Of a DNA stretch of 41,656 bases, positions 1 to 36,564 are shown one piece after another (position 1 is the stretch's first letter; each line of letters starts with the position of its first letter). The notes under the pieces were generated by a model. The model saw only the letters and a program-made list of their open reading frames with translations, ran no database searches and was not told where the DNA came from. The DNA is from Macrostomum lignano. Lineage: Eukaryota. The stretch covers positions 1 to 41,656 of the forward strand of contig NIVC01003818.1 in the NCBI GenBank assembly GCA_002269645.1. Reading direction: 5' to 3'. Made by a program: the position numbers and the translations under genes.

Positions 1-72
1 TTTGGGGCGAAAAGGAAGAGAAATTGATAAGAGAGGGCTTAGAATCGGAATTACTGAATTTCGGAAAGGAAG

Positions 73-483
73 GAGAGGGTGCAGGAGTGATTGAGAGGGT
101 GCAGGAGTGACTGAGAGGGTGCAGGAGTGACTGAGAGGGTGCAGGAGTGATTGAGAGGGTGCAGGAGTGATTGAGAGGGTGCAGGAGTGACTGAGAGGGT
201 GCAGGAGTGACTGAGAGGGTGCAGGAGTGACTGAGAGGGTGCAGGAGTGACTGAGAGGGTGCAGGAGTGATTGTGATGGTGCAGGAGTGATTGAGAGGGT
301 GCAGGACTGATTGTGAGGGTGCAGGAGTGATTGAGAGGGTGCAGGAGTGATTGTGAGGGTGCAGGAGTGATTGTGAGGGTGCAGAAGTGATTGTGAGGGT
401 GCAGGAGTGATTGTGAGGGTGCAGAAGTGATTGTGAGGGTGCAGAAGTGATTGTGAGGGTGCAGGAGTGATTGAGAGGGTGCA
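73..483 (+). repeat. 20-bp minisatellite (GAGAGGGTGCAGGAGTGA[C/T]T), about 20 copies
   Basis: Direct periodicity in the sequence; it explains the repetitive minus-strand ORF 51..731. Confidence 0.95.
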
Positions 484-992
484 AAGCTGGGGGAAAGCCA
501 CGCCGGGGTGGGGTGGGGCAAAGAGGCAAGCCACTCAGGCTTGGGGGTGGGCAAGCCACGCAGGGGTGGGGGGCAAAATTCACAGAGTTGAAGGGCGAGA
601 GAGATAGAAGGTGGAATCCGGAAGTCTAGCCAATCAGCGGTCTTCTTGTCTAGAGACATGAGCTGCCAAGCCCAAACGACGAGAGAAACCAAAAGTGGGC
701 AGCCAACTAGAATACGAAAGAACGAAAACATTGGCGGGATAAGGCAGAAGACAGACTAGAATGAACAAACGAAAGGAAAAGAAGAGGCTGGGGTTCTATT
801 CTTTCCTCCATGGTTTTAGTTGTCTCTTGATGATCTACTAATCCACACTAAGTCGGCAGAGTTATAAATAAAGTTCCTACAGCAGCAGTTCGGCCATAGA
901 CAGACGGATCAAACCTGCGCCCATATGCAGATAGAAGCCTAGCGGGATGAAAATCCGCCAGCACAGCTCAGATAACCAAGAGTAAACACAGA

Positions 993-4462: not shown

Positions 4463-5366
4463 TAGGAAGGCGCCTACACCATTACTGCACCTGTGCCCCA
4501 GCCTGTGAGACACGGTCTTCCCCCTGTTAAACACGGGTGCCAGAGCAGGACATGCGGCAGCCCTGGAAACCCGGAGATCCCGCTGCACAACGTCTCAGAA
4601 TGCTGCTGCTATTGAGCTGAACATCGATGAGGCTGTGGCCGCCGCAGCTGTTTTTCGAGACCTGTAAAATATCATACAATATACAATGCAACTGAGTTGT
4701 TCTTCGCTTTTTGCTAAAATTTCCTGCGCACCGGCGGGTGCTCTTGAGTCCGAGCCAGGCTTATTTTTGCGATTCCCCGCCTTTCCGGGCAGTCCGAGTG
4801 GCCAAGGAGCTCAATGCGGAAAATTCCTCGGCAAGCCAGCCCGCTGCTGCCAGACACGCCTGAGTCTCCCTCAGTGTCGCTCGCCAAATTCCAGACTGCT
4901 CGCCCACCTGTCTCACAGGCAAACAATGCCCCCCCCCCTCCGCATTGTGTCCCCGGCTCTGCCACTCTGCCCTCTCCTCTGTCCCCGCCCCTCCTGTTGC
5001 CACGGTGATCAGCTCCTGGAAGACAGCAAGACGGCGCCCGCCCCGCCCCGCTGCCTTGAGGCTCCGCAGCCGGCTGTACTCTGCATGGCCTTCCCGGCCG
5101 CCTTGAGGCTGCCGAGAGTTCAGAGCTGCAGCCCCACCCGCTCCGTGGTGATGAGGCGGGACGCGCCAGTCTGCCTGTGAGTAGCAACAGGCCGGCTGTG
5201 ACTGGTGCGTCTTCCTTGCCCATTGTTCGACTAACTGCTTCAGAAGCTTCAGTGCTTTGCTGAGCCTCAGCGGGCGAGCTGGAAGCGACACCTCTGAATA
5301 ATAGCGCAGGAAATTGACCGAGAAAATGCATGGAATGCGTAGAAAATGCGGAGAAAGAAATTCAGA

Positions 5367-5900
5367 GGGAGCAGACACAGGTAGAGAGCAGACACACAAG
5401 CAGAGAGCAGACACACAAGCAGAGAGCAGACACACAAGCAGAGAGCAGACACAGGGAGCAGACACACAAGCAGAGAGCAGACACACAAGTAGAGAGCAGA
5501 CACACAAGCAGAGAGCAGAGACACAAGCAGAGAGCAGACACACAAGCAGAGAGCAGACACAGGGAGCAGACACACAAGCAGAGAGCAGACACACAAGTAG
5601 AGAGCAGACACACAAGTAGAGAGCAGACAAACAGGTAGAGAGCAGACACACAAGCAGAGAGCAGACACACAAGCAGAGAGCAGACACAGGGAGCAGACAC
5701 ACAAGCAGAGAGCAGACACACAAGCAGAGAGCAGACACACAAGCAGAGAGCAGACACAGGGAGCAGACACACAAGCAGAGAGCAGACACAGGGAGCAGAC
5801 ACACAAGCAGAGAGCAGACACAGGGAGCAGACACACAAGCAGAGAGCAGACACAGGGAGCAGACACACAAGCAGAGAGCAGACACAGGGAGCAGACACAG
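5367..5900 (+). repeat. Compound minisatellite of about 19/13-bp units (GAGAGCAGACACACAAGCA / GGGAGCAGACACA)
   Basis: Direct periodicity; it generates the spurious Cys/Leu-rich ORFs 4761..5975, 5267..5866 and 5362..5898. Confidence 0.93.
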
Positions 5901-6245
5901 CGTACAGAGAGCAGCGTACTGCATGGATAAAGTTCTGTTCTGTTTATAAACTGAAGCTTGCAAATTTGGGAGCATTTAAGGTAGTAAAAAACATTTTGAC
6001 AATTTTTACACTTTCTACCTTTTTCTCCTACTTTAAGTAGGCAATTGCAGTTGTCATATGCCAGTTAGTACATGCTAGTCACAATTTTGCGTCTGAAGGA
6101 ATGACCTGCAAGAATGTCACACTTTTGCCTTGGCAGCTATGAGTCAACAACTCAACACGGTGGACTTTAGTCATCCTTTAGGATCTTCTTTGGACTCGAA
6201 GAATTTATACCAAACTCGAGACAGTAGGGTATTCCAGTGCCTTGA

Positions 6246-7880: not shown

Positions 7881-8184
7881 TCACATCAGACCGCACTTGG
7901 CCGGCCGGCCAGAGTCATCGCTGCCCGAGTCACTCAGATTGTTTGGCCGCGGCCGGTTCCGCTGCAGCTCCTTTTGCCGCTGCTTCTCCCGCTTCTTGGC
8001 TTGCTTCTTCTGCTCTTTGGAGGAGACTGGCGAGCTGAGCTGAGCTGAGGAGGCTTGCTGCTTTTGCTGCGTCGCCTTCTGTTGCAGTTGCTTCTGCTGT
8101 AGCTGCTCTTTCTGCTGCTTTTGCTTTCCTGACGGCTCCTCGGGAATTGCGGAGGGGTGTCTGGCGGCTGCTGGGGCTCGGAAG
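7881..8184 (-). CDS. RPS6KB: S6 kinase terminal exon: Q/K-rich tail ending SGRPAKCGLM* (CaaX box)
   Basis: Pyrimidine-rich acceptor TTCCTTTGCCTGTCCCACCGCAG|C. The phase-2 join gives a 100-codon open frame ending ATG TGA at 7881. Confidence 0.78.
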
Positions 8185-8265
8185 CTGCGGTGGGACAGGC
8201 AAAGGAATTACAGTTCTCCTGGAACCACTGTGTGACTCTCCACTACTTCTGTGTGACTGTGTGTC

Positions 8266-8850
8266 CAGAGTGAATCTCAGCACAGAGTGAATCTTTAGTC
8301 CAGAGTGAATCTTTAGTCCAGAGTGATTCTTTAGTCCAGAGTGAATCTCAGTCCAGAGTGAATCTCAGTCCAGAGTGAATCTCAACCCAGAGTGAATCTT
8401 TAGTCCAGAGTGAATCTCAGCCCAAAGTGAATCTTTAGTCCAGAGTGAATCTCAGTCCAGAGTGAATCTCAGCCCAGAGTGAATCTTTAGTCCAGAGTGA
8501 ATGTCAGCCCAGAGTGAATCTCAGCCCAGAGTGAATCTCAGCCCAGAGTGAATCTCAGCTCAGAGTGAATCTCAGCTCAGAGTGAATCTCAGCTCAGAGT
8601 GGATCTCAGCTCAGAGTGGATCTCATCTCAGAGTGAATCTCAGCTCAGAGTGAATCTCAGCACAGAGTGAATCTCAGTCCAGAGTGAACCTCAGTCCAGA
8701 GTGAATCTCAGTCCAGAGTGAATCTCAACCCAGAGTGAATCTTTAGTCCAGAGTGAATCTCAGCTCAGAGTGAATCTCAGCTCAGAGTGAATCTCAGCTC
8801 AGAGTGAATCTCAGCTCAGAGTGAATCTCAGCTCAGAGTGGATCTCAGCC
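8266..8850 (+). repeat. 17/18-bp minisatellite (CAGAGTGAATCTCAGTC / CAGAGTGAATCTTTAGTC) filling the last S6K intron
   Basis: Direct periodicity; lies inside intron 8185-8858. Confidence 0.94.
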
Positions 8851-8858
8851 AGTCTTAC

Positions 8859-8974
8859 CCAGTGGCGCCGGTCAGACTGGAGCGCCGCCTTGCAACCGCT
8901 GCTTGCCGGCTGCCTGCGCTCCAAGGCTCCTTGGTGACCACGTCCAGCACAGCGGGGTCAACAAAGGTGAAGCC
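8859..8974 (-). CDS. RPS6KB: S6 kinase exon (hydrophobic motif): GFTFVDPAVLDVVTKEPWSAGSRQAAVARRRSSLTGAT
   Basis: Acceptor CTTTTAG|GGC. Joined to the previous exon it gives LFEGFTFV (FxxFT hydrophobic motif). Donor GG|GTAAGA is phase 2. Confidence 0.88.
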
Positions 8975-9065: not shown

Positions 9066-9176
9066 CTCAAACAGTTCGGCAGCGGAAGCCGTCAGCTCAG
9101 AGTCGTCCTCGGGTGACTCCACAGGGTTTTCGTGCGTGAATTTCGGGTCAAACAGGGACACGTCCGTGTCTGAGGC
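9066..9176 (-). CDS. RPS6KB: S6 kinase exon (turn motif): ASDTDVSLFDPKFTHENPVESPEDDSELTASAAELFE
   Basis: Not in the ORF track. Translated by hand between acceptor GGCAG| and donor |GTTTGC; it matches the AGC C-tail pattern DVSxFDxxFT..PVDSP. Confidence 0.88.
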
Positions 9177-9225: not shown

Positions 9226-9460
9226 TAATACACTGCCCATACTTCTGATGCACTGTACACACTACTGATACACTGTCCATACTTCTGATGCACTGTACAC
9301 ACTACTGATACACTGCCCATACTACTAATATGCTGTACACACTACTGATACACTGCCCATACTACTAAGATACTGTAAAAAACTACTGATACACTACCCA
9401 TACTAATATACTCTACACATTACTGATGGACAATCCACACTACTGATGCGCTGTCCACAC
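9226..9460 (+). repeat. Degenerate 20/40-bp tandem repeat (CATACTACTGATACACTGCC-like) in an S6K intron
   Basis: Direct periodicity; lies inside intron 9177-9509. Confidence 0.85.
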
Positions 9461-9509: not shown

Positions 9510-9946
9510 CAACACGGAGGCAGGCCGGAACGGCGGGCTGTAGTTAAGGTCGCGCACCCGACGCCAGTCAACGCTGCGGAAGAACGGGTGCCGCTTGAGC
9601 TCCTCGACACCGGTTGGTCCGGAGCCGATTCTGTCGCGCACCCGGCGATTCAAAAGGCCTCGTAGCAGCGAGCGGGCCTCGTCACTGAGGTACTCGGGCA
9701 CCGACAGCTTGGCCTTGATGATGCGCTCAATGGTCTCCTTGCGGGTGTCGCCGCTGAAGGGCGGTCCGCCTGACAGCATGTCGTACATGAGGGTGCCCAG
9801 ACTCCACCAGTCCACGGCGCGGCCGTGGCCCTCCCGCAGGATGATCTCGGGCGCCATGTAGTCGATGGTGCCGCAGAATGTGTTGGTGATGCCGCCCTCG
9901 TTCACGGCCACTTTGCTGAGGCCAAAGTCTGTCAGCTTGATATGGC
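9510..9946 (-). CDS. RPS6KB: S6 kinase exon (DFG, activation loop, C-lobe)
   Basis: GHIKLTDFGLSK, TNTFCGTIDYMAPE, VDWWSLG, HPFFRSVDW. Acceptor GCAG|GCC matches phase 1; donor TTG|GTAAGG is phase 0. Confidence 0.93.
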
Positions 9947-10149: not shown

Positions 10150-10731
<582 letters not shown>

Positions 10732-12398
10732 CTAGATTAAATAATTGGGTTTTATATGCTTTAAAATAAAATACTCATAAATTTATAGAAATTTACTTTT
10801 TGTAGAATATAGGATAGGAAATGGATACCGCAAAAATATAATAATAACTTATTTTAGCAGATTCACTATTTTTGCAGTTTTTAAAACTGCTTAACTTTAT
10901 TTCGTTGTCATGTCTGTCAGGCAAGAAAATAAAAGAGAAAGAAGGATAACAGCGTAACAGTTGTTAGTTTTTTAACAATGAAAGTCGACCAAATGCAAGA
11001 TTCACAGTTCACTAATTCGTGCCCCGCGAAAATTTTGGGTTGCTTTTATTGTTGTAACCTTTGACATTCGCTAGAATATTGAAGCGAAAAAACCCTAAAG
11101 TTTAAATATGTTGTCTATAATCACCAGGGAAAATAATATGAACACTCATAACTACATGTATAGTTATTTACTTTATTTATTTATTATAAACCCGTGTATA
11201 CACTAAAAATAAATAAACGTATGAGTCTTTGAACATATTTAGATAAACATATGCTTCTTTTCTTTTTACTGATTAAAAATATTTATGAAAAAAGATAACT
11301 ATACCATATAAGTATATGTATAAGTAAGTATTAAGTAGTAAGTAAGTATAAGTATAAGTAGCAAACCTTCTTTTTCTCAATCGTTGATTTGTCTCCGATA
11401 AATGACACATTTTCTTCTGAACTGTCAGACTTGACAGAATGTTTGTCATCTCTTTCCATTGAATGCAATATAAAAATATATTCTTATATATTATGTCGTT
11501 ATATGTATTATAATATGATTGTGTATAGCAAAAGCCAGAGTACGAACTAAGTTTTTGACACAGAATGACAATACTACACAATAGTGAACTAGTTGTTCAA
11601 AAGGCAAGCTCGAAAGAACTAAAAATGGTATACATGTAAAAGGTATTTCAGTAAAAAATTAAATACTATACTCGTAACCAGTTTAAACATATTATGTGAC
11701 TCAATCTACAGGTTACACATTTTAATTAACAAATGAGTAGCATTTGGTGAAATCCTTTGGCATTAATCATAGTATTAGGACTATAGTTTTTTATTTCTGA
11801 TGCCGGCTGTGCACTGTAATTTTATGTTTTTGTTAAAACTACAAAAAGCCGTGACAATTTTTACGAAGTTATGCATTTTATATACCAGAGCGTGCTAAAG
11901 ATATGTGGTCGCAACCTATGTCTATGGCCAACTCAAACGCCATATATCATTTATATTTATGCCTCTCTTTGAAAACAAGAGGTGAGTAAAACCAGCAGAA
12001 TCAATTTCCAGAATAACAGAATAAAACGAAACGTGTGCAAATGCGTGTACATGAATAACTCGCATTTGTGCTTACAGTAGAGCAGCATACTAATCACACG
12101 CAAAAATACAACAGTAAAATTTGTGTGAAGAAAAACATGCAAATTATTATTATTAATTAGAATATCAATGACAGTACGTGTCTGTACGTCAGATTCTCAT
12201 TTCCCCGGGCCGCATATACACGTAAATGTACATTTACGCTCGTAGAGTAAGGACTCAAACACATATTTACTCGTCTATAATTTTCACTAGATTGTCAAGT
12301 ATTAAGGGCGTTATCATCTACTGACTATAGTAATTTAAAATGAACATAAACCTACATGTACATGAATGCTTCTACCAGCCCATCCTTCAATTCACCTC

Positions 12399-13076: not shown

Positions 13077-16000
13077 TTAAACAGCTTGATAGAATCTCGT
13101 CTGTTTGACAGTACGACCCGATCGTGTCACATATGGCGCATTTGTGTCAGCATTGGTCGTTTGTCGGTTAGCATCTTCAGCAGGATTACTTGTTGTTGGA
13201 TGCTCATGAGTTGGCTGAATTCCGGATGATGCAGTTGAATCTTTCAGATGACTCTCTGAGATATCTACTGGTCGCTGTAGCGCTAGATGTTTCGGTATTG
13301 CAGACAGTCTGGAGTTCGCAACTCTGGGTGCTAAAAATCGTCGGTTCCTTCTGTAGCATTTACCATCAGCAGTTTGCACTTGGTACGATCGTTCTGGATC
13401 CGTATGATCCCGCGATCGAATTTCTGCTGGAATCCACTGTCTCTTGTCCTCGTACAACCAGACTTGCTCTCCAGTCTCCAGTGGCTTCAAATCCCTAGCT
13501 GTACTGTTGTAGCGAATCGCGTCCTTCCTTCGCATGGCGTTCAGTGTTTCCAAATCATTCTTCGTCCATGTTCGTTTTGGTATCAATTCCATTATTGGTA
13601 CAGGTAGTTCGTACCTCAATTTCCTTCCCATCAGTAGCTCTGCTGGGGTCGGTAACCCACGCTCAATCGGAGTATTACGGTAGTGAAGCATTGCTTTTTC
13701 AAAGTCTTCATTCTTTCTCAAGAAGCATTTCACTGTTTGCACAGCTCGCTCCGCTAATCCATTGGACTGTGGATATCTTGGTGATGATGTTACAAGCGCT
13801 ATCCCGCTTGATTTAGCATATAATTGGAATGCGTTGGACGAGAATGGCGGTCCGTTGTCACATCGCAACTTCTCAGGTGTTCCGAATGTGGAGAAATATT
13901 TCTTTAATTGCAGGATAACAAACTCAGCTGTATTTGATCTTAATGGATCTGCACAGATCCATCGGCTGTATCTGTCCACTAAAACTATGAATTTTCGACC
14001 TTTAAAATCGAACAGGTCAGTCGCGCACTCTTGAAATGGATAATCAGGATGCGGACTTTGAATGATTGTTTCTTTCTGTGGTCGGGATTGGCTGCTTTGG
14101 CAGGCATCGCATGCTGTTATGTAGTTCTGGATGTCCCGACGCATCTGAGGCCAGTATACCGATCCTCTTGCCTTTAGCAGTGTTTTTTCAATGCCTTGAT
14201 GTCCTTCATGAATGATGTTCAAGAATTCGTGGCGCATGGTCAGTGGTATAAATATCTTGCTGGTTTTCATAATTAATCTGTCGTGCTCGGCTAAATCGTG
14301 ACGAACATTCCAGAAAGGCTTTAGTTGTTCTGGCAATTGGTTTCTGAGTTCCGGCCAACCCTCGCGAATGCGATTCTTGATCGCATGGCAAGTTGAATCT
14401 GCATATGTGTTCCTGGATCTTCTTAAGTAGGTCTTCCGGTAGACAAACCTTTTGGATACCCAAGATTTGATTCTCAAGCTCAGAGTCTATGTCATTCGCC
14501 GAATGCACGGATTGCAAGAAAGCACGGCTTAATGTATCAGCCAAATAAAGATATCTTCCCGGTTTGTATTGCACGTCTAAGTCGAATTCTTGGATCTTGA
14601 GTATCAGACGTTGAATTCTAGCCGATAGTTCATCCATTGGCTTCTTCATAATATACTGCAGCGGTTTGTGGTCAGACTCGACGGAGACTCTACGTCCCCA
14701 GAGATACTGTCTGAACCTTCGACAGCCAAATACTATCGCAAGCATTTCCTTCTCTATCTGGGCATATTTCTTTTGAGCGGATGTTAGAGCTGATGATGCA
14801 TACTCAATGACATGTCCTTCCTGCAATGGTGCTGCTCCCAAGCCATCTTTGCTGGCGTCGACAGATAAAATTAGGTCTTTATTCGGGTCAAATGGCGCAA
14901 GCACAGGTGCTTCGCAGAGGCACTGCTTGATTCCTTGATACGCCTTTTCTTAATTGTTGGTCCACACCCATTCGGATTCTTTCTTCATGAGTTCTCTCAA
15001 AGGACTTGTCAGTGCAGAAAAGTTTGCTATGAATCTTGACAAGTAATTTGCACTGCCAATAAACCGTTGGAGCTGCGCTTGCTTTTCAGCACGCTGTTCA
15101 AAACTGTTTGGGTGCGGCATTTCTTTGATGCTGTTTACTTTTTGTGGATCTACTTTCACACCTTTGTCAGTTAGTATGTGTCCAAGAAATTGAAGCTCGG
15201 TTTTGCCAATGGTCGTCTTTTGCCTGTTCAGAGTCAGGTTCTTTTTCCTGCATTGCTCCAAAAGATTTCGAACTGCTTGGTCGTGCTCTTCCCGAGTCTT
15301 TCCCCATACTATGATGTCATCGATGTAGTTAGCAGATTTTTCTACCTGACTTGTCACTTCTTCTTTGATGCGCCTTTGGTAAGCTTCAGGTGCATCCTTT
15401 AGACCAAAAGCTAGTCGATTCCATTTGTAAACACCAAACGGAGTGTGAAATGCAGTAAGAAGTGAACTTTCTTGATCCAACTGAACTTGATGGAAGCCAG
15501 ACTTAGCATCAAATGTTGAGAAGTATTTTGCTCCTGTCATCTCGCTAATCATCTCGTCATAAGTTGGAATGGGGTATCGATTTCTGACAATATCATCATT
15601 TAGATTCTTTGGATCTAAGCACAGTCTAATCGAGTTATCCTTCTTCCAGACGATAACAACATTGGACACCCAATCTGCCGGCTGGTCGCATTTCGTTATT
15701 ATTCCTTGGCTCTGCAAACGGTCAAGCTCTTCACGCAGGGCCTTCATAGCCGCAAATGGGACTTTCCTTGGGCCTTGGACTTACGGTATTGCACCTTCTC
15801 TCAATGAAATGTGATGCGCTCCAGGCAGACATCCAATTCCTTCGAACACATCGCTGTATTCCTTAAAGATCTTTGATTCCGTCAGCACTTCTTTATCTGT
15901 AGTCTTTTTTACGTTGAGGATTTGAATCAGGCCTAATTTCTCAGCTGTGCCGGTCGCTAATAGAGGTGTATTGTCTTCCTCAATGATGGTGAATTCTACT

Positions 16001-16086
16001 GTATGCACGGCGTCTTTGTGCGAGAGTCGCAATTTAATCTTGCCCTTCACATTAAGCGTCTGATTGTTATACACTGATAGTCTGGT
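13077..16086 (-). pseudogene. pol: Ty3/Gypsy pol (protease C-half, RT, RNase H, integrase), disrupted
   Basis: RT (FDAKSGFHQ, YIDDIIVWG), RNase H (VDASKDGLGA, YAQIEKEMLA, SDHKPL) and integrase (HEGHQG..CDAC, ATDLF, DNGPPF, SNGLAERAVQ). In-frame stops at 15781 and 14950, and a frameshift near 14410. Confidence 0.95.
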
Positions 16087-17150
16087 TGATGTGTTCCTTA
16101 TTACCCGACTTCGGTAATCAAAGAACAATCACTTCTAGCTCTTTAGCTAGGCAACCCAGTAATCAAATGAAGGTATTCAATTACCTTTAATCCGGATTCT
16201 TAGATTTCGTTCTTGAGTCGTTCTCAACTGTAGATCTCTCAGTAGATCTCGTAGACTTCTAGACGTCTTCAGGTGTCAATCGGGTCCGAGTTTCCTTCTT
16301 CTCTCTTTTAGAAGTATTTCCGGCCGGAATCTGTCGTTCGGACCAATAGGAAGCTTCCAAATTAACAATGGGTACCCTGCGCCAAACTGCGGTCTTAATT
16401 AAGCCTCCTTCTTCTAGCAGTGCCTCTATGCACTCTAGGAATAGCTCCGGAAACCACTGATAGTCTTCTAAGATCTATCAGGGGCAGTCCTTCTGGAGAC
16501 TGCAACCAGTAGAGTCTAAACAGACTCAAGAGTCTCAACAGACTCAAACTAAACTCAAGTCACACTGGACTTGAGCGAGACGTCTCTAACAACAACAGGC
16601 GCAAATAAGGAAGGCTTTCCGCAACAACCGACCGAGTATTGGTCCAGGAAGTCCGACTGTGGCTTCCTCTTCGGAGCTCTTCTCCTTCCGGAGGAATTGT
16701 GGCTCCGGGTCCGTTCCGGACCACTTGTATTTATAGGCGTTCAGACCTCTCTCGAGGTCGTACATCACTGTCTTCGCAAATGTCAAAGGGTCACGATTCG
16801 GTGGCTGTCAAGCATGACAGGGTAGAAAGTTGCGCAACTAGTCTACTGTAAAAGCGCATGATTGGTTACCGTAGCTGGTAGACTTTGATTGGTTCATCCG
16901 GGTGCAACCCGAGTGCAAACCAAATGATGACTTGAAGGTGGGGTTTGAATTGACAGTTGTTGGTCGCACGTGATTGGGTGATTTCTAAAATTAGCATGCT
17001 CGAGGTCTCTCTCTTCCTATTGGTTAGTCCGAATATACTTATAGTTCAAAGCATACCTTTATTCATGCTCTTCAATTTACTACTAAATAAAATGTGTGAG
17101 TAGTACATTAACACTTTTATGTCTTCTTACGGGAGGTAGAACACTCTACA
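16087..17150 (-). mobile_element. Solo LTR of a second family (copy 1, 1064 bp)
   Basis: TGTAGAG...ACACATCA termini; inverted copy of 18643-19716; 4-bp flanks ACCA and GCTA. Confidence 0.85.
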
Positions 17151-17565: not shown

Positions 17566-18642
17566 ATGTCCGACGCAGCTGGACTGCGACCTCCAGGGCC
17601 CATGGTATTCGATGAGGCCAAGTCAGAACGCTGGAGAAAATGGATCGGCGCATTCAATTTATACATGACCGCCACAAAGCGCGACAAGGACACTGACAGC
17701 ATGAAGAATGCGATTTTGCTGACCGCCATCGGTGAAGAAGGCAGGGACATATTCGAGACATTCGAACTCTCTACTGACTCTGCTCACAAAGACATCATCG
17801 ACAAATTCGAGAAATTCTGCATTCCTCTGGACCGCGAAACATTTGATCGCTACAAGTTTAGAATGCGTAAGCAGGAGCAGTATGAAGATTTTGATCACTT
17901 CATAAATGAGCTACGATTGTTAATAAAGCGATGCAGTTTTTCAAAGCCTAAAAATGGGCAATGCATTGACGATGCCATGCTTCGAGATCAGATAGTATAT
18001 GGGGTTCATAATTCAGCACTCCGTGAACGGCTCCTTGAGGAAGAGAAGCTGACACTGGAAAAGGCTATTGTTCTGTGCCGTGCCACCGAAGCTTCAAAGA
18101 TGCAAGCCAGGCAGATGACAGGTATAAAGATGAAAACAGAAACTCTGTCAGTCGAATTGTAAAAGACCCTGATCACAAGTTGCAGCAATCAACCAGAGCC
18201 AAGTCCAAGTCTATCACACGAAAGGCTCCTACAGGACAACAGGCATGCAGATACTGCGGCAAGAACCACAAATTTGGTCACACCAACTGCAGTGCCTATG
18301 GCAAGACCTGCTTGAACTGTGGACAAAAGAACCATTTTAAGGCCATGTGCCGGAAAGAGAAAACAAAACAATCAAAACAGATTCGTACAGTTGAAGATGA
18401 GCTTACTGACGTGACTGAAACATCGAATTCTTACCAAGCTGCTGCATGGGATGTAAGTAAATATTCTATGAATTATTATAATGGAAATGAAGTGAAAGCC
18501 GTTTCAAAAACAGTTGTGTCGCTAGACACTGAGTTTGGACACATCGTCAACTACAAAATTGATACCGGCGCTGATGTGAATATTATGTCCGAGAAACGCT
18601 TAAGAACAATCACAGACAACCCATTAGAAAAAGACCACACCA
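17566..18642 (+). pseudogene. gag: Ty3/Gypsy gag plus protease N-half (Mag-like), frameshifted and cut by a solo LTR
   Basis: Capsid-like MSDAAGLRPP..W..W...F..Y and LRDQIVYG..LRERLL; two Cys/His knuckles (CRYCGKNH..C, CLNCGQKNHFKAMC); protease IDTGADVN. Frameshift near 18125-18130. Confidence 0.92.
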
Positions 18643-23216: not shown

Positions 23217-26200
23217 ATGACTAAGCTCCACGCTGCCAAAGGAGCGACATTCTGTCTGCAAATAAATTTACAGCATTGCGTATCTGCGTCAGTAAATCTG
23301 ATGAAGATTGCTGAGCTGTACAGGCCAGGCCTCATCCTGATCCAGGAACCCTGGATGCGCAACGGTAAGTTGCCCAACATTCCCTCTGGCTACTCTGATT
23401 TTTATGTGTGTGGCCCGGGGAACAGCCGCCCTAGAGCGGCTATCCTCGCTGCTAGCCATCTCCAGGCTTGGCTGAGGACTGATCTCTCTGATGGAGACCT
23501 TTGCGTCATCCAATCTAATCATTTCTCTCCGCGTACGTGTCTTGTTGCCTCGGTTTATATCCCAGGCGACAGAGACCCTGCTCCCGAGAGTTTACTGCGC
23601 CTTGCGCAGTACTGCGAGTCCCAGAACGCTGAGCTGTGCTTAGGGGGCGACCTCAACGCGCACCACAAGCACTGGGGCAGCAAAGATACCAACACTAGAG
23701 GAGAGGAGCTTCTGGCCCTCATCTCTAACACAAACCTCATGCTCTGCAACCGCGGCAGCACTCCTACCTTTAATAATGGCAGATGGACCGAGGTCCTCGA
23801 CGCCACACTCGTTACCCCAAGACTCTTTGACAGAGTCAAGGAGTGGAGAGTCTGGTCTGAGGAGCCCTCCCTGTCTGACCACTGCTTTATCGCCTTTAAT
23901 ATCGCGGACACTAAAACCCAGTCTCCGATCACTTGGAGACGCAATATCCGCAACACTGATTGGGCGGCCTACAAGGCTGCCCTTGATCTGCACCTGCAGG
24001 AACTCACGGACTTACGTCCGATTGAGACCTGCGAGGATGTGGATCATATGGCTGAGACGCTGACAGGTTGCATTATTGCAGCCTACGAAGCGGCTTGTCC
24101 TGCTCGCGCCTACAGAGGCAAGACCTCGGCGCCGTGGTGGAACCCGGAGCTGGGGAAACTCAGGCGGAAGGCCAAAAGCCTTCATCGCCGTGCCATGAAG
24201 ACCGGAAACCCGGAGGACATGGAGCTTTTCCGGCAAGCCTCCCGCAATTTCAAATCTGAAGTGCGCAAGGCCAAGGAATGTAAGTGGCGCCAATTCTGCA
24301 ATGAATTGGATCAAGACAGACCTACTTCTAGGCTTGTCAAGGCCCTTACAATGGACAAAATGTCCAAATTAGCCATGATCAAAAAAGATGATGGCTCTCT
24401 TACTAAAGACCCTGAAGAAGTGCTTCAGCATATGCTTAGCACATTCTTCCCGAGGGTACCTACTGCTAGACCGGAGCCCAACCATTCGATGGATGGAGCC
24501 ACCCTAGCGGCGGGCATTGTCACTGAAGACCTAATCGCTCGTGCGGTCAGAACCTTCAAACCCTTCAAATCTCCTGGACCTGATGGTATCTACCCTGTTC
24601 TCCTTCGTGAAGCAGCCAAGATACCCTCGTTCCTGAGACTCACCCGCAATCTTATGCGGGCCTCTATCCAGCTGGGATACGTTCCCAAAAGCTGGACTGA
24701 AGCTCGAGTAGTCTTTATTCCCAAACCTGGGAAGGGTGACTACCAAAGCGTCAAGGCCTTCCGGCCAATTAGCTTAACGTCAGCAATGCTTAAGCTCACT
24801 GAGAGGCTTATTCTCTGGCGGCTGCTCTCCTGCGAGCTGACAGCGATGCCCCTCAGCAATAATCAGCACGCCTTCCGTACCGGGAGGTCGACTGACAGCG
24901 CCCTGCATGCGATTGTCGAAAAGATTGAACGGGCGGTACTGGGTGACGGTTACGCCCTGGCTCTCTTTCTTGACATTGTTGGCGCCTTCGACAACGTTAT
25001 CTTTGAAGCGTTTCAGAGGGCCCTTCAAAATCGCAAAGCTCATGCTACCCTCATACGGTGGATCATGTACATGATCTCCAACCGTACGGTCACTGCCCAA
25101 CTTCTTGGGCAAACTGCCTCCACCAGAGTCTGTAAGGGTGGACCCCAAGGCGGAGTCCTCACCCCGACGCTCTGGAACCTGGTCATGGACGCTCTTCTGA
25201 GTGACTCCCGACCTGACCCCGTCTTCAAAGTCGGGTATGCTGATGACGTCACGGCCATTGTGGCAGGACCGTCTCCCAGCACGCTCAGGGATCTGATGCA
25301 GAGCTTTATCCGCAAAGCAGAATCCTGGGCCAATGACAATGGTTTGGAACTCTCTGAGCCCAAAACCGTTGCCATTATGTTTACCAGCAGACTACGCTGG
25401 AACATACGTCCTCTGCAGCTCTACGGCAGAGATATTGCCTTCGCGCACCAGACCAGATGTCTCGGGGTCACACTTGACCACCGGCTCAACTGGTCCTTCC
25501 ACGTGAAAGCAAAAGCTAAGCGTGCCTCAGCCATCCTGGCCCAGCTCCGACGAGCACTTGGCACTTCTTGGGGTCTATCCCCAAAGCGGCTTTGGTGGAT
25601 CTATACTTCCGTAGTTAGACCTGCCATTACGTACGCCTCTGTTGTCTGGGTTAGCGCTACCCAGGTCAAAAGCCATGCAGACCTGCTCAACACGATCCAA
25701 GGCAGAGCGTGTAGGCTCATCTGCAACGCCACCAGGTCCACGCCCTTTGCTGGCATGGGGGCCTTTCTTAATCTTCCGCCTCTTGACCTCTTCATCAGGG
25801 GTGAGGCGGCTAGAACGACGCGGCGTCTAATTGATGCCGGCGTCAAATTCATTTACATGAGAGCACCTGCTAAGCGGAACCTTGTCCCGCATAGCGATCT
25901 GTGCCTCAACTTTCTCAACGAGTGTCAGGCCAATCGCGTCTTCACCGATGGCATTGCCTCAACGCTCAACCTGAGACAGCGCTACTCCGTAGCTATCGAC
26001 TCGCGCGATAACATCAATGACCATTGGAACCCTGGTGAGCTTCATTGCTACACCGACGGTTCTAAGCAGTCAGCCAACACCGGCTTTGGTGTTGGAATCT
26101 TTCTGAACGGGAGGGTCATCGCTACCCACGCTCAATACACTGGGGTCAACTCCAGTGTTTTCCAAAATGAAGTTCTGGCCATCAGCTCCTGCACTGCAGA

Positions 26201-26957
26201 GCTTCTCGCCACTGGCGTTACTGGTAAGAACATCATTTTCCATTCGGACAGCCAAGCTGCCTTGCACGCCATCAGTGGCTGCAGCACCAACTCTGCTACA
26301 GTCCTTGACTGTATCAAACTCCTCAATATGTTGGGTTCCGCCAACAAAATTACCCTTAAGTGGGTTCCGGGGCATGTGGGGATCCGAGGAAATGAGTTGG
26401 CTGACACCCTTGCAAAAGTTGGTGCCTCCGGCTCCTCTCTCGGCCCCGAACCTCTTGTCCCGATTCCTGGCTGTGTCATCGACTCGCGCATCAAAGCGTG
26501 GATCAGGACTCAGCACCGCTCGACTTGGGCGAACCGCACGAACTGCAGGCAATCCAGAGGCGCTGTCCCTCAGCCCTCTCACCAGCTCCGGAAGCTCCTC
26601 TTGCGCCTCTCGCGCAGAGACATCCGGGCTGCCACCATGACCCTCTCTGGTCACGGCTGCTTCTCCAGGCACCAGTACCTGCAGGGCAACGCCACCAACG
26701 CCACCTGTAGTTTCTGCAACTCAGGTGACGAAACCGCTGAGCATTTCGTCAGCATCTGTCCCGCCTTCACGCGGGCCAGACTCACTTACCTCGGGCCACA
26801 CACATCTATTACTGAAGCGTGCAAACCCGAAAACTTTAATCAGCTCATGCGCTACCTTCGGGCCACCCGCAGGGCTGAACTCTCCTTTCCAGAGAGCACC
26901 ATAGCTGCTGGCGACACTGGGGGACCTCCCTGGGCGGCGCCAACCCTCCGTCCATAG
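23217..26957 (+). CDS. Non-LTR retrotransposon ORF2: APE endonuclease, RT, RNase H and CCHC finger (1246 aa, intact)
   Basis: QINLQH..LIQEPW, GGDLNAHH..WGS, SDH; PGPDGI, RPISL, PQGGVLTP.LW, GYADD; YTDGS, VFQNEVLA, HSDSQAAL, WVPGHVGIRGNELAD; CSFCNSGDETAEHFVSIC. Confidence 0.96.
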   Translation: MTKLHAAKGATFCLQINLQHCVSASVNLMKIAELYRPGLILIQEPWMRNGKLPNIPSGYSDFYVCGPGNSRPRAAILAASHLQAWLRTDLSDGDLCVIQSNHFSPRTCLVASVYIPGDRDPAPESLLRLAQYCESQNAELCLGGDLNAHHKHWGSKDTNTRGEELLALISNTNLMLCNRGSTPTFNNGRWTEVLDATLVTPRLFDRVKEWRVWSEEPSLSDHCFIAFNIADTKTQSPITWRRNIRNTDWAAYKAALDLHLQELTDLRPIETCEDVDHMAETLTGCIIAAYEAACPARAYRGKTSAPWWNPELGKLRRKAKSLHRRAMKTGNPEDMELFRQASRNFKSEVRKAKECKWRQFCNELDQDRPTSRLVKALTMDKMSKLAMIKKDDGSLTKDPEEVLQHMLSTFFPRVPTARPEPNHSMDGATLAAGIVTEDLIARAVRTFKPFKSPGPDGIYPVLLREAAKIPSFLRLTRNLMRASIQLGYVPKSWTEARVVFIPKPGKGDYQSVKAFRPISLTSAMLKLTERLILWRLLSCELTAMPLSNNQHAFRTGRSTDSALHAIVEKIERAVLGDGYALALFLDIVGAFDNVIFEAFQRALQNRKAHATLIRWIMYMISNRTVTAQLLGQTASTRVCKGGPQGGVLTPTLWNLVMDALLSDSRPDPVFKVGYADDVTAIVAGPSPSTLRDLMQSFIRKAESWANDNGLELSEPKTVAIMFTSRLRWNIRPLQLYGRDIAFAHQTRCLGVTLDHRLNWSFHVKAKAKRASAILAQLRRALGTSWGLSPKRLWWIYTSVVRPAITYASVVWVSATQVKSHADLLNTIQGRACRLICNATRSTPFAGMGAFLNLPPLDLFIRGEAARTTRRLIDAGVKFIYMRAPAKRNLVPHSDLCLNFLNECQANRVFTDGIASTLNLRQRYSVAIDSRDNINDHWNPGELHCYTDGSKQSANTGFGVGIFLNGRVIATHAQYTGVNSSVFQNEVLAISSCTAELLATGVTGKNIIFHSDSQAALHAISGCSTNSATVLDCIKLLNMLGSANKITLKWVPGHVGIRGNELADTLAKVGASGSSLGPEPLVPIPGCVIDSRIKAWIRTQHRSTWANRTNCRQSRGAVPQPSHQLRKLLLRLSRRDIRAATMTLSGHGCFSRHQYLQGNATNATCSFCNSGDETAEHFVSICPAFTRARLTYLGPHTSITEACKPENFNQLMRYLRATRRAELSFPESTIAAGDTGGPPWAAPTLRP

Positions 26958-29070: not shown

Positions 29071-30814
29071 TCGCGCAGGATAAACTTCTCCGATCCGAGT
29101 GTTCGTTCCCGCTCTGTGGCTCTGTTATGCCATAAAAATCTTTCTGCCGTACTAAGCAGCTTATCCATACTGGTATACTCTTCCCCATTCAGCTTTGATG
29201 AAGCTAAAGAGCTTGGTTGCTTTCGTTTTATAACACTAAATAAAACTTTCTGATTCAAACAAAGATTCTCTCTCTAAGTAGCCCCCTCGCTACATGTAGT
29301 CTCAAAACCGGACTTAACGTTTCAAGAGAAATAAAAAACACCACACGCCATTTGAAATTACAAATTTTCTAAATTTCAAACGTGCTACTCGATTTTCTGA
29401 TGTTTGTCTGCGTTAACGGGGAATTTTAAATTGGTGCTTGTAAAATTTAAAACGTCATGGTGTGCAATAACCGCGAATATTGGGGTGTCTGCCTTCTTGG
29501 AGTTTTTCGAGTCCTAAGACGCAAAAACGCCACGATTCGAATCCTAGCGATCTGATTTTGCGTGGAAAAAACTTTTTTTCAATTTGAAAATGCCTGTTCT
29601 ACGGACTTGACTGAGTCAATAGAACATTTCTGCGCACCTTCATGGCTCTGATTAAAAGAAGCTCGTGCGAACTCCTTAGCTGATCGAACCGTCTTATCAG
29701 TGTTCAGTTGCAGATTCTAGAATGATCTCAAATAGCAGTAGGGCGCGGTGGGAAGATAAGGAGACAGCAAAAAGCTGCCGAGATCGGCGGCGGATCGAGA
29801 AGAAAAGGAGACTTTCGAGCTGATAAGACGCGACTGCTGCCTGTAAATATAGGAATTGCCTTGGAGACGATTTCGAACTTTCGACTCGACTAAAAGCCGA
29901 AGAATGCGCATTTTCATTGATTAGACAAATTTAATGCTGGTATCAGTGAGTCGCAACGTATTCGCATCGTCGTTGGTCTTCGGTACTGCTTTATGCTTGA
30001 AAGTGCATGCAAATGTACACGCAATGTATATTAGCGTGGCTGGTAGGGGATTCCATAATTATACGAGTAGCTTTTGATGCTTATAGCAGCGATCTTCAAG
30101 CCAATCTTGCAGCATCCAGCGATGGGTCGAACCGCCCCGAATTGAATCGTTCAGCTCCATGTACGGTTCTGGGCTCGCTTGCTTGTGTTGCTGTGCTTCA
30201 CTTTGCTTCACCTGTCGCCCACCATTCTCGGTACATGTAAGAAAATCTTACCATAGCAACGGTAACAATTTGATGAAAGTGAAAGCCGTTTCTGCGATCT
30301 CTTTTTGTCTAAACAAGCTTCTAATCTTCAATTTGATTTTTAACTTTCGTGGCGAGGCAGGTGGGTGAAGTCGCTGGTTTCGCCCGCATGGTGATAAAAA
30401 CCATAGCGCCACTTTTTCAAGCAATGCATTCAAGTTGCAGATAGCAAACTCGAAAGTGAAGATAAAAGATTCCAGTGGCATTATGTGGCTGGCGCTATCA
30501 GCTGAGCAGCAGGTGATCAGAGCTGCCCCGCTCGGGCAACCAGTCAAAAAGTTCAAGTGCCGGTGGCTGCGCCGCTCACCCCTCTCTGCAATGCGTTGAC
30601 GCACGCTCAAAATAATTTTCAGACAGCCAAAACTCACCTGGCCTGGCCTCGACCAGTGCCAGCTGGCAGCGAGAGGCGTTCACCGCACGGCCTATTTGTT
30701 GTTCCGTCGTCATGGCAGCCGCGATAAAACCCCAACAGCAGCTGATAAATGTCGCCCAAGCCGCGAGTCCGAACTGCGAATCAGTTTTTTGGCGACCTCG
30801 AACCCACTGGGAAA

Positions 30815-31924: not shown

Positions 31925-31959
31925 GTGAGTAGCTTTTCCTATGCTAGGCGAATGTCCCC

Positions 31960-36483: not shown

Positions 36484-36564
36484 GTAAGGCCTCTAAAATA
36501 TGTGGGTGAGTTTTATAAGTACTCGTAGATGAATAATTCACTATGCAACCATAAACACTTGCAG

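What the first reader, a model, noticed from the sequence alone, without database searches (positions are those of the whole stretch)
7881..8184. S6 kinase with a C-terminal CaaX prenylation box and polybasic stretch
Seen: the phase-2 donor at 8859 and the acceptor at 8184 fix a reading frame (not the one in the ORF track) encoding a Q-rich segment, KKQAKKREKQRQKELQRNRPRP, an acidic SDSGSDDS patch, and terminal KCGLM-stop. Known: CaaX with X=M is a farnesyltransferase substrate class; polybasic plus farnesyl targets K-Ras4B to membranes; the upstream activator Rheb is farnesylated; to my knowledge vertebrate and fly S6Ks have no CaaX. The activation loop (TFCGT), turn motif (PVESP) and hydrophobic motif (FEGFTF) are intact. 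Inference: a membrane-anchored S6K could rewire TORC1 signalling.
Basis: partly seen in the sequence, partly recalled or inferred. Interest (0 to 1): 0.75.

Follow-up and report, generated by a model that had tools for sequence, protein, structure and literature searches.

The report
Flatworm S6 kinase ending in CaaX
A growth-control kinase gene (S6K) of the flatworm Macrostomum lignano really does end in a lipid-attachment signal, and the same K-C-x-x-M ending is kept in S6K paralogs of schistosomes, flukes and tapeworms, which points to a membrane-tethered S6K that I could not find described anywhere.

Summary
The window is a Macrostomum lignano contig. On its minus strand lies a six-exon S6K gene identical to the RNA-seq-guided public model PAA49669.1. 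Its last exon (8184-7881, phase-2 junction with 8859) encodes the Q-rich segment, the K/R-rich segment, the SDSGSDDS patch and KCGLM-stop.

The CaaX box is not a chance ending:
- An old M. lignano paralog (kinase dS about 1.4) ends KCRLM.
- A third M. lignano S6K gene hides an unannotated, phase-compatible exon ending KCHLM-stop in its last intron.
- Every full-length member of a second S6K clade in trematodes and cestodes ends K-C-x-[V/I/T]-M.
- Over 19 genes, K(-4), C(-3) and M(0) are invariant, -1 is V/I/L/T and -2 is free. The 100-350-residue tails are otherwise hypervariable.
- No non-flatworm S6K or RSK that I retrieved has a canonical CaaX.

Farnesylation is therefore the best reading. 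The K-Ras4B analogy is weak, because the basic stretch is 17-41 residues from the Cys, is separated from it by an acidic patch, and is absent in the parasite proteins. The anchor looks Rheb-like (farnesyl only). The window copy also lacks a TOS motif, so its link to TORC1 is doubtful. A kinase-domain tree does not unite the Macrostomum and parasite CaaX genes. I found no literature on a naturally prenylated S6K. Prenylation itself is untested.

The parts
11367..11459 (-). Exon 1 (ATG at 11459): MERDDKHSVKSDSSEENVSFIGDKSTIEKKK. It is homologous only to the 3' part of exon 1 of the paralog. There is no TOS motif.
   Evidence: tblastn of P0001 against the window, sequence, alignment A1, negative TOS search
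10197..10731 (-). Exon 2: N-lobe of the kinase. It carries the G-loop GRGGYGKV (10593-10570), YAMKVL Lys (10527-10510) and YRDLKPEN (10239-10216).
   Evidence: Pfam Pkinase E=7e-69
9510..9946 (-). Exon 3: DFG (9929-9921), activation loop TNTFCGT (9887-9867; Asn where most S6Ks have His), APE, and the C-lobe.
9066..9176 (-). Exon 4: AGC C-terminal segment with the turn motif NPVESP (9128-9111) and the first two residues of the hydrophobic motif.
   Evidence: Pkinase_C E=1.9e-10
8859..8974 (-). Exon 5: the rest of the hydrophobic motif FEGFTF (9071-8963 across the intron) and the pseudosubstrate-like RRRSS (8890-8876). The phase-2 donor is GG|GTAAGA.
8185..8858 (-). Last intron (phase 2), made almost wholly of a 17-bp minisatellite (8265-8850, about 34 copies). 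If retained, it gives an immediate TAA stop (GGG TAA).
   Evidence: The same intron position and phase are seen in paralog locus L001.
7881..8184 (-). Terminal exon: tail of 100 residues plus the TGA stop (7883-7881).
8055..8126 (-). Q/K-rich segment KQKQQKEQLQQKQLQQKATQQKQQ (residues 451-474). It is absent from paralog P0005.
7944..8018 (-). K/R-rich segment KEQKKQAKKREKQRQKELQRNRPRP (residues 487-511). It may add electrostatic affinity for membranes or act as a nuclear localisation signal. It is not adjacent to the CaaX.
7911..7934 (-). Acidic, Ser-rich patch SDSGSDDS (residues 515-522). The DSG...SG pattern is shared with P0005.
7884..7898 (-). K-C-G-L-M: invariant Lys followed by the CaaX box (Cys528 at 7895-7893). 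This is the predicted farnesylation site.

Best explanation
The window encodes a divergent but intact p70-type S6 kinase paralog of Macrostomum lignano. Its long disordered tail ends in a genuine CaaX box (K-CGLM).

The most likely mechanism is as follows.
1. Cytosolic farnesyltransferase attaches farnesyl to Cys528 (X = Met, a2 = Leu).
2. RCE1 removes GLM.
3. ICMT methylates the new C-terminus.
4. The kinase gains a weak, reversible lipid anchor.

No palmitoylatable Cys and no contiguous polybasic run flank the Cys, so the anchor should behave like that of Rheb. It would give farnesyl-only, transient binding to ER, Golgi or lysosomal endomembranes rather than K-Ras4B-type plasma-membrane locking. 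The more distant K/R-rich block may add some electrostatic affinity or act as a nuclear localisation signal.

The CaaX tail is a conserved module of flatworm S6K genes. It sits on its own terminal exon behind a phase-2 intron. In at least one M. lignano gene it coexists with an alternative 'acidic' terminal exon.

Shown here: the gene model, the motif and its conservation pattern. Inferred: prenylation, membrane localisation and any effect on TOR signalling.
For: - The gene model is identical to the RNA-seq-guided annotation. A second, independent M. lignano fragment, P0121, spans the same junction and ends identically.
- Paralog P0005 and its copies P0122 and P0123 end KCRLM. They share the six-exon structure and the phase-2 last intron. 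Divergence from the window gene is old: kinase dN 0.205, dS 1.38; tail dN 0.74. Even so, K, C, L and M are retained.
- A hidden, in-phase terminal exon ending QQKCHLM-stop lies in the last intron of Mlig018773 (L006) and of its two copies L010 and L011. My rough estimate of the chance expectation for K-C-x-L-M-stop in that locus is about 0.002.
- An exhaustive profile search and a clade search found the K-C-x-x-M end in every full-length member of a neodermatan S6K clade. That clade covers Schistosoma spp., Trichobilharzia, Heterobilharzia, Calicophoron, Dicrocoelium, Opisthorchis, Paragonimus, Mesocestoides, Hymenolepis, Rodentolepis, Taenia, Spirometra and Sparganum, plus one metatranscriptome contig.
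- The position profile over 19 genes is: M(0) 19/19, C(-3) 19/19, K(-4) 19/19, -1 only V/I/L/T, -2 free (S, C, N, G, R), and everything upstream hypervariable. This is the constraint pattern of a CaaX box.
- There is mRNA-level support in parasites. The S. mansoni protein ending KCNIM is an uninterrupted ORF on 3.1-3.2-kb contigs assembled from 150 sequencing runs. CAX-numbered S. japonicum GenBank entries in the same cluster, one of them on a 2.5-kb contig, end KCSIM.
- CSVM, the commonest parasite version, is the CaaX of human Rheb, which is farnesylated (PMC7255682).
- Catalytic and regulatory motifs of the window protein are intact.
Against: - No biochemical evidence of prenylation exists for any of these proteins, and I could not run PrePS or GPS-Lipid.
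- Gly at a1 is unusual. This position is solvent-exposed and tolerant, which I state from general knowledge and did not test.
- The window copy is on a branch roughly 1.8 times longer than that of its sister paralog (identities). It has lost the TOS-bearing N-terminus, and a retrotransposon lies just upstream.
- Its near-copy P0121 has a Pro-to-Ser change in the turn motif.
- The kinase-domain NJ tree does not unite the Macrostomum and parasite CaaX genes (0-1 of 200 bootstraps). Their shared ending may therefore be convergent or inherited through an alternative exon. Either way it argues for function, but the history is unresolved.
Confidence: 0.7

Rival explanations
1. The K/R-rich stretch plus farnesyl work together as in K-Ras4B and lock the kinase on the plasma membrane.
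For: Both Macrostomum CaaX tails have 13-14 Lys/Arg in the last 50 residues, with net charge +8 and +4. A Lys immediately precedes the Cys in all 19 genes, as in the K-Ras4B ending TKCVIM (that sequence is from memory). A disordered tail could still bring a block 20-40 residues away to the bilayer.
Against: The basic block is not contiguous with the Cys. It is interrupted by E and Q and is followed by the acidic SDSGSDDS patch. Net charge of the last 20 residues is -1 in the window protein. The parasite CaaX S6Ks have only 3-5 K/R in the last 50 residues, so the block is not part of the conserved module. For K-Ras4B it is a polybasic region in the short hypervariable linker next to the CaaX that cooperates with farnesyl (PMC7255682).
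Confidence: 0.2
2. The conserved K-C-x-x-M end is a C-terminal signal of another kind and is not prenylated. Examples would be a PDZ or other protein-binding ligand, or a C-terminal degron.
For: Mammalian S6K1 is known to use its extreme C-terminus as a PDZ ligand for neurabin (from memory, not checked here). CSVM and CSIM formally fit the class I pattern S/T-x-hydrophobic.
Against: Position -2 is free (S, C, N, G, R), and the window and P0005 have G and R there. A class I PDZ ligand needs S/T at that position. The invariant residues are exactly those a CaaX needs: Cys at -3, aliphatic or Thr at -1, and a fixed X = Met.
Confidence: 0.1
3. The CaaX module is functional in the sister paralog and in the parasites, but this particular window copy is a decaying or non-functional duplicate.
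For: The branch is about 1.8 times longer than that of P0005. The TOS-bearing N-terminus is lost. LTR-retrotransposon pol ORFs lie 1.6-4.7 kb upstream of exon 1. There are deviations in otherwise invariant positions: GRGGYG, FLAKK, GTIDYMAPE. Near-copy P0121 differs at roughly a dozen of 206 positions by my eye, including the turn-motif Pro. Only one locus was found in the assembly.
Against: The ORF is uninterrupted through six exons with canonical splice sites. All catalytic motifs are present. Kinase dN/dS against P0005 is 0.15. The model comes from an expression-based annotation. The last 30 residues are identical between P0001 and P0121, although this is not statistically significant.
Confidence: 0.12
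4. This is a gene-model artefact or a chance ending. In that case the real transcript would use another terminal exon or frame.
For: All three frames are open across 8184-7884. I could not inspect reads. Intron retention would stop translation at once (GGG TAA).
Against: Two independent annotations give the same junction and end. The intron position and phase are the same in the paralog. The translated exon is homologous to the paralog's tail in this frame only. The ending recurs across flatworms.
Confidence: 0.03

Closest known systems
p70 ribosomal S6 kinases (vertebrate S6K1/S6K2, Drosophila S6K)
   Same: It has a single AGC kinase domain with Pkinase_C. The T-loop is T-x-TFCGT, the turn motif is S-P and the hydrophobic motif is F-x-G-F-T-F/Y. 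An R-rich pseudosubstrate-like stretch follows the hydrophobic motif, and the tail is disordered. In the tree it falls inside the S6K clade.
   Different: No CaaX was seen in any non-flatworm S6K retrieved. The window copy lacks the TOS motif. It has Asn instead of His in the T-loop and Asp for Glu in GTIEYMAPE. It lacks the acidic FxFEEDFEDMD tail motif of the canonical flatworm S6Ks.
Rheb (farnesylated activator of mTORC1; human CaaX = CSVM)
   Same: The anchor would be farnesyl-only, with no second membrane signal next to the Cys. The parasite S6K paralogs carry the identical tetrapeptide CSVM. Such an anchor is expected to give weak, transient endomembrane binding (PMC7255682).
   Different: Rheb is a small GTPase, not a kinase. 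The invariant Lys before the Cys is not a Rheb feature (Rheb's upstream residues are from memory).
K-Ras4B (polybasic region plus farnesyl, CVIM)
   Same: X = Met, and a Lys comes directly before the Cys. There are basic residues in the tail of the two Macrostomum proteins.
   Different: In K-Ras4B the polybasic region sits in the short hypervariable linker next to the CaaX. Here it is 17-41 residues away, mixed with acidic residues, and absent in the parasite proteins.
Naturally prenylated protein kinases: GRK1 (farnesyl), GRK7 (geranylgeranyl), LKB1/STK11 (farnesyl)
   Same: These give precedent for a soluble Ser/Thr kinase carrying a conserved C-terminal CaaX. GRK1 and GRK7 are also AGC kinases. 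LKB1 farnesylation at a CaaX is documented in PMC3898322. The GRK facts are from memory.
   Different: They belong to different kinase families and pathways. None is a TOR-pathway effector kinase.
Yeast Sch9 (functional S6K analogue tethered to the vacuolar membrane)
   Same: It is an S6K-type TORC1 effector that has to sit on the membrane where TORC1 resides (from memory, not checked here). This makes it a functional analogy for a membrane-resident S6K.
   Different: Sch9 is tethered by lipid-binding protein regions, not by prenylation.

Membership tests
p70 S6 kinase (AGC family, S6K subfamily) | Protein kinase domain followed by the AGC C-terminal domain | tested here: met
   Pfam Pkinase E=7.1e-69 (residues 71-332) and Pkinase_C E=1.9e-10 (residues 356-396)
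p70 S6 kinase (AGC family, S6K subfamily) | Groups with S6Ks rather than with RSK N-terminal kinase domains | tested here: met
   NJ tree of 41 sequences and 326 columns. The window protein lies inside the flatworm S6K group, with RSKs as outgroup.
p70 S6 kinase (AGC family, S6K subfamily) | Activation-loop PDK1 site T-x-T-F-C-G-T, turn motif S-P, hydrophobic motif F-x-x-F-T-[FY] | tested here: met
   TNTFCGT (residues 230-236), NPVESP (372-377), FEGFTF (391-396). The His-to-Asn change in the loop is shared with all CaaX S6Ks and with three non-CaaX S6K-like hits of unknown origin.
p70 S6 kinase (AGC family, S6K subfamily) | N-terminal TOS motif (F-D/E-hydrophobic-D/E-hydrophobic) for raptor binding | tested here: not met
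   The annotated N-terminus MERDDKHS... has none. There is no match to F[DEH][ILVMF][DE][LIMF] in any minus-strand frame between 11400 and 32000. Sister paralog P0005 has FDIEL.
p70 S6 kinase (AGC family, S6K subfamily) | Basic pseudosubstrate or autoinhibitory stretch after the hydrophobic motif | tested here: inconclusive
   RRRSSLTG is present (residues 421-428) and aligns with R-R-R-x-S in other flatworm S6Ks. The S/T-P phosphorylation sites of the mammalian autoinhibitory domain are not recognisable.
p70 S6 kinase (AGC family, S6K subfamily) | Phosphorylates ribosomal protein S6; activated by TORC1 and PDK1 | not testable with these tools
   This needs kinase assays and rapamycin or Torin sensitivity tests.
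CaaX prenylation substrates (farnesyltransferase class) | Cys exactly four residues from the C-terminus, with the stop codon right after X | tested here: met
   TGC GGT CTG ATG TGA at 7895-7881
CaaX prenylation substrates (farnesyltransferase class) | a2 aliphatic, and X = Met/Ser/Gln/Ala/Cys, which directs farnesylation | tested here: met
   a2 = Leu and X = Met in the window protein. Across 19 genes a2 is V/I/L/T and X is Met in 19/19. The specificity rule itself is from general knowledge.
CaaX prenylation substrates (farnesyltransferase class) | Motif conserved in relatives while the surrounding tail drifts | tested here: met
CaaX prenylation substrates (farnesyltransferase class) | Flexible, accessible linker upstream of the Cys | tested here: inconclusive
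   NNLSDSGSDDSGRPAK is polar and Gly/Ser-rich, so it is probably disordered. I ran no predictor or structure.
CaaX prenylation substrates (farnesyltransferase class) | Isoprenoid actually attached, followed by -aaX cleavage and methylation | not testable with these tools
   This needs metabolic labelling, mass spectrometry or an in vitro FTase assay.
K-Ras4B-type polybasic-farnesyl plasma-membrane signal | Run of Lys/Arg directly adjoining the CaaX Cys | tested here: not met
   The last 20 residues have net charge -1. The basic block ends 17 residues before the Cys, and an acidic patch lies between them.
Class I PDZ-binding C-terminus | Ser/Thr at position -2 | tested here: not met
   The window protein has Gly at -2 and P0005 has Arg. 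The position is variable across the 19 genes.

The most novel reading that the evidence does not exclude
The ancestral flatworm S6K gene carried two mutually exclusive terminal exons. One was an acidic FxFEEDFEDMD tail giving a soluble isoform. The other was a K-CaaM tail giving a farnesylated, endomembrane-bound isoform. M. lignano Mlig018773 still has both exons, while later duplicates kept one each. These duplicates include the window gene, Mlig030058 and the neodermatan CaaX clade.

In the parasitic flatworms, a review reports that Rheb and TSC1/2 cannot be found. There, the farnesylated S6K carries Rheb's own CSVM and may put the effector kinase itself on the TORC1 membrane. The TOS-less window copy would then be a TORC1-independent membrane S6K, activated in the manner of Akt or SGK by PDK1 and TORC2.
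Probability: 0.15. Interest if true: 0.85.

Novelty: new variant of a known kind. Interest (0 to 1): 0.7.

Why it matters
S6K is one of the best-studied effectors of TOR. It is treated as a soluble kinase that TORC1 recruits through its TOS motif. A lipid-anchored S6K kept by selection across free-living and parasitic flatworms would be a natural experiment in moving the effector, rather than the activator, to the membrane.

It is directly testable. M. lignano has transgenesis (PMC5730564), so a GFP-tail fusion with a Cys-to-Ser mutation is practical there.

The parasite orthologs lie in schistosomes, liver flukes and tapeworms, where kinases and farnesyltransferase are both discussed as drug targets. 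A review reports that Rheb and TSC appear to be missing in those parasites (PMC5745459). How TORC1 output is organised there is therefore an open question on which this protein bears.

The possible pair of alternative terminal exons (acidic or CaaX) in one gene would also be a neat case of localisation switching by choice of 3' exon.

Tried and rejected
1. A word-indexed search with the two Macrostomum tails alone returned only P0121. It gave no other Macrostomum species and no transcript contigs, so I have no independent read-level proof of the 8859/8184 junction.
2. I tested whether all CaaX S6Ks form one clade. The NJ trees do not support it: 0-1 of 200 bootstraps, under two distance corrections and three taxon sets. 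The Macrostomum CaaX pair nests with the Macrostomum paralogs 018773 and 000742 (180-191 of 200). A count of signature columns went weakly the other way, 3 against 1. No maximum-likelihood program was available, and long-branch effects on the parasite clade cannot be excluded. I therefore leave orthology versus convergence open.
3. I considered the Asn in the T-loop as a unique marker of the CaaX genes and rejected it. TNT also occurs in three S6K-like hits without CaaX and of unknown origin (P0132, P0152, P0222).
4. I compared the hidden CaaX exon among the three near-identical Mlig018773-group loci to look for selection. The result was uninformative: 1 difference in 190 bp against roughly 1.5% in the flanking intron, because the copies are too recent.
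5. I searched for an acidic-tail exon downstream of the CaaX exon in the window and in L001, and for a CaaX exon in L007, L008 and L009. None was found.
6. I searched for a TOS motif upstream of exon 1 in the window and found none.
7. Literature searches for a prenylated or CaaX-bearing S6K, including two flatworm kinome papers, found nothing.
8. The PDZ-ligand reading was rejected on the variability of position -2.
Full report
WHAT IS THERE

The window is a whole 41,656-bp contig of the free-living flatworm Macrostomum lignano. The best protein hit is the public model PAA49669.1 (BOX15_Mlig026841g1, here P0001). It is 100% identical to my translation, and its longest contig is 41,656 bp.

On the minus strand I assembled the gene directly from the sequence:
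- exon 1: 11459-11367
- exon 2: 10731-10197
- exon 3: 9946-9510
- exon 4: 9176-9066
- exon 5: 8974-8859
- exon 6: 8184-7881, which includes the TGA stop

All introns are GT-AG. The last intron (8858-8185) is phase 2 and consists almost entirely of a 17-bp minisatellite with about 34 copies.

- a Q/K-rich stretch (residues 451-474)
- KEQKKQAKKREKQRQKELQRNRPRP (487-511)
- SDSGSDDS (515-522)
- GRPA-KCGLM-stop

All three frames are open over this exon, so the frame needs outside support. It has three kinds:
1. The public annotation of this assembly is a genome-guided RNA-seq assembly (StringTie/TACO/TBONE; PMC5730564).
2. An independent 206-residue M. lignano fragment, known only from UniRef and MetaClust (P0121, A0A1I8H131), spans the same junction. 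It is 91% identical and has the same last 30 residues.
3. The tail is homologous in this frame to that of a paralog.

IS IT AN S6K?

Yes, on the following evidence.
- Pfam finds Pkinase (E=7e-69) and Pkinase_C.
- The G-loop, VAIK Lys, [14 protein letters not shown], the T-loop TNTFCGT, the turn motif NPVESP, the hydrophobic motif FEGFTF and an RRRSS stretch are all present.
- In NJ trees the protein sits inside the flatworm S6K group, with RSKs as outgroup.

One defining S6K feature is missing. The annotated N-terminus (MERDDKHS...) has no TOS motif. No TOS-like pentapeptide occurs in any minus-strand frame for 20 kb upstream. The sister paralog P0005 begins MATNGVFDIELD.

IS THE CaaX MORE THAN CHANCE?

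A C-x-aliphatic-M ending would occur by chance in roughly one protein in a thousand (my rough estimate), so a single case means little. The comparative evidence is what counts.

(a) The paralog Mlig030058.
- P0005 and its copies P0122 and P0123 end ...SGKQKDKCRLM.
- Its locus L001 has the same six exons, with nearly identical exon lengths, and the same phase-2 last intron.
- The two genes are old duplicates. The kinase region has dN 0.205 and dS 1.38 (dN/dS 0.15).
- The tail is almost unconstrained (dN 0.74, with large indels). Yet the pattern DSG...SG...K-C-x-L-M survives.

(b) A hidden exon in Mlig018773.
- In L006, the locus of the 'canonical' paralog P0006 with its annotated acidic tail, the last intron contains an open frame ending QQKCHLM-TAG.
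- With the acceptor TTTAAAG|C at 16473-74, the exon 16475-16664 is in phase with the exon-5 donor. The split codon TG|C gives Cys, as it does at the annotated junction.
- The exon starts ...AQRRPSRPTLAPAVV, which resembles AGTRRPIPMKPASAATV of P0005.
- The same intact exon is present in the two other copies of that gene, L010 and L011.
- Those copies are too similar for a selection test, and no annotated isoform uses the exon.

(c) A second S6K clade in parasitic flatworms.
- An exhaustive profile search of 1.8 billion representative proteins with the AGC C-terminal region plus tail, followed by a clade-profile search, uncovered this clade.
- Every full-length member ends K-C-x-x-M. The endings are: Schistosoma japonicum, S. 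mekongi, S. bovis and S. turkestanicum (CSIM); S. mansoni (CNIM); Trichobilharzia regenti and T. szidati (CSIM); Heterobilharzia (CSVM); Calicophoron (CCIM); Dicrocoelium (CSTM); Opisthorchis (CCTM); Paragonimus (CSVM); Mesocestoides, Hymenolepis, Rodentolepis, Taenia, Spirometra and Sparganum (CSVM); and a JGI metatranscriptome contig (CSIM).
- The members that lack the ending are evidently truncated or mis-predicted models, most of them without a hydrophobic motif.
- The canonical flatworm S6Ks have the THTFCGT loop and the acidic FVFAEDFEDMD tail motif. They never have the CaaX, and neither do the roughly 200 S6K and RSK sequences from other phyla that I retrieved.

(d) The position profile. 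Anchored at the C-terminus, 19 genes show M(0) 19/19, C(-3) 19/19 and K(-4) 19/19. Position -1 is restricted to V/I/L/T, position -2 is free, and everything further upstream is hypervariable in tails of 105-347 residues. This is the signature of a CaaX box. It is not that of a class I PDZ ligand, which would fix position -2.

(e) mRNA support in parasites. The S. mansoni protein is an uninterrupted ORF on 3.1-3.2-kb contigs assembled from 150 sequencing runs. The S. japonicum cluster includes CAX-numbered GenBank entries that end KCSIM.

HOW IT PROBABLY WORKS

With X = Met and an aliphatic a2, the expected enzyme is farnesyltransferase, followed by RCE1 and ICMT. This is the same pathway as for Rheb, whose human CaaX is CSVM, the commonest parasite version (PMC7255682).

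- The K/R-rich block ends 17 residues before the Cys.
- It is interspersed with Glu and Gln and is followed by an acidic patch.
- The last 20 residues have net charge -1.
- The parasite proteins have only 3-5 basic residues in their last 50.
- No upstream Cys is available for palmitoylation.

A farnesyl-only anchor gives weak, transient binding, mostly to ER and other endomembranes. That is my prediction. The basic block may be a secondary electrostatic contribution or a nuclear localisation signal. These steps are inferred, and nothing here shows lipid attachment.

EVOLUTIONARY HISTORY (UNRESOLVED)

- The neodermatan CaaX clade is monophyletic (200/200).
- The window gene and P0005 are sisters (181/200).
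- The two groups do not join (0-1/200). The Macrostomum pair nests with the Macrostomum paralogs 018773 and 000742 (180-191/200).
- P0005 is 79.6% identical to 018773 in the catalytic region but only about 60-63% identical to the parasite CaaX proteins.

On its face this means two origins. The hidden CaaX exon in 018773 suggests a reconciling model: an alternative terminal exon that predates the duplications and was later partitioned among the copies. Consistent with that model, the CaaX gene of Taenia solium also has a phase-2 intron a few residues after its R-x-R-S stretch, with the whole tail on the last exon. Either history argues that the ending is functional. Which one is right needs better trees and more free-living flatworms.

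STATUS OF THE WINDOW COPY

- It is the fastest-evolving of the Macrostomum S6Ks, with a branch about 1.8 times longer than that of P0005 (from the identities).
- It lacks a TOS motif and deviates at a few near-invariant positions.
- LTR-retrotransposon pol ORFs lie 1.6-4.7 kb upstream of its first exon.
- Its near-copy P0121 carries a Pro-to-Ser change in the turn motif.
- Against decay: the ORF and splice sites are intact, all catalytic motifs are present, and it is in an expression-based annotation.

I rate it as probably functional. Its connection to TORC1 is questionable. The idea that a TOS-less, membrane-bound S6K is activated in the manner of Akt or SGK is speculation.

NOVELTY

Full-text searches for a prenylated or CaaX-bearing S6K found only Rheb, LKB1 and Ras literature. 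Two flatworm kinome papers do not mention CaaX, prenylation or farnesylation. A review reports that Rheb, TSC1 and TSC2 cannot be found in the Hymenolepis, Echinococcus, Opisthorchis and Schistosoma genomes, with a caveat about annotation quality (PMC5745459). This makes a farnesylated S6K in some of the same genera (Schistosoma, Hymenolepis, Opisthorchis) an interesting lead, but I could not test for Rheb in M. lignano.

I class the finding as a new variant of a known kind: an S6K with a conserved prenylation module.

Noticed in passing
L006 16475-16664 (also L010 Cys at 16195 and L011 Cys at 18657): An unannotated, phase-compatible terminal exon ending QQKCHLM-stop lies inside the last intron of the 'canonical' M. 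lignano S6K gene Mlig018773 and its two copies. It sits upstream of the annotated acidic-tail exon. One gene may therefore make a CaaX isoform and a non-CaaX isoform.
   Followed up: partly
window 11367-11459 and upstream to 32000 (minus strand): The window S6K has lost the N-terminal ~40 residues that carry the TOS motif in its sister paralog (FDIEL). No TOS-like motif is found upstream.
   Followed up: yes
window 9867-9887 (minus strand): The activation loop reads T-N-TFCGT (Asn for the usual His) in all CaaX-bearing flatworm S6Ks. Among the other sequences retrieved, it occurs in only three S6K-like hits of unknown origin. The meaning of this is unknown.
   Followed up: partly
window 8855-8860; L001 18886-18893: The phase-2 GTAAG donors of the last intron create an in-frame TAA at once (GGG TAA in the window, ATG TAA in L001). 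Intron retention would therefore give a tail-less, CaaX-less kinase ending just after the RRRxS stretch.
   Followed up: no
window 8265-8850 and 9228-9460: Two introns of the S6K gene are filled with minisatellites: 17 bp x 34 copies, and 20/40 bp x 12/6 copies. The paralog loci also have minisatellite-filled introns (L001 about 17600-18030; L006 last intron).
   Followed up: no
window 13077-16128 (minus strand): LTR-retrotransposon pol ORFs lie 1.6-4.7 kb upstream of S6K exon 1. They include reverse transcriptase (RVT_1) at 14950-15747 and integrase (Integrase_H2C2 plus rve) at 13077-14477.
   Followed up: partly
window 23217-26957 (plus strand): A 1246-aa ORF of a non-LTR (LINE-type) retrotransposon: endonuclease, reverse transcriptase and RNase H.
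   Followed up: partly
window 30749-32122, 35647-36528, 36977-38359, 39795-40652 (plus strand): Four ORF pieces with strong Carboxylesterase (PF00135) matches. They probably represent two to four tandem carboxylesterase genes.
   Followed up: partly
window 1-730, 1750-2600, 4760-5975: Long tandem arrays translate into repeated peptides in several frames, for example HSCTLTITPAPSQSLLHP units and Cys/Leu-rich units. They look like more minisatellite DNA.
   Followed up: no
P0121 (UniRef A0A1I8H131), no window coordinates: This is a second M. lignano copy or allele of the window gene's C-terminal half. It is 91% identical, with small indels in the tail and a Pro-to-Ser change in the turn motif (NSVESP), but its last 30 residues are identical.
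   Followed up: partly
literature (PMC5745459): A review states that Rheb, TSC1 and TSC2 cannot be found in several parasitic flatworm genomes. Some of the same genera carry an S6K paralog ending in CSVM, which is Rheb's own CaaX. Whether the two facts are linked is unknown.
   Followed up: no
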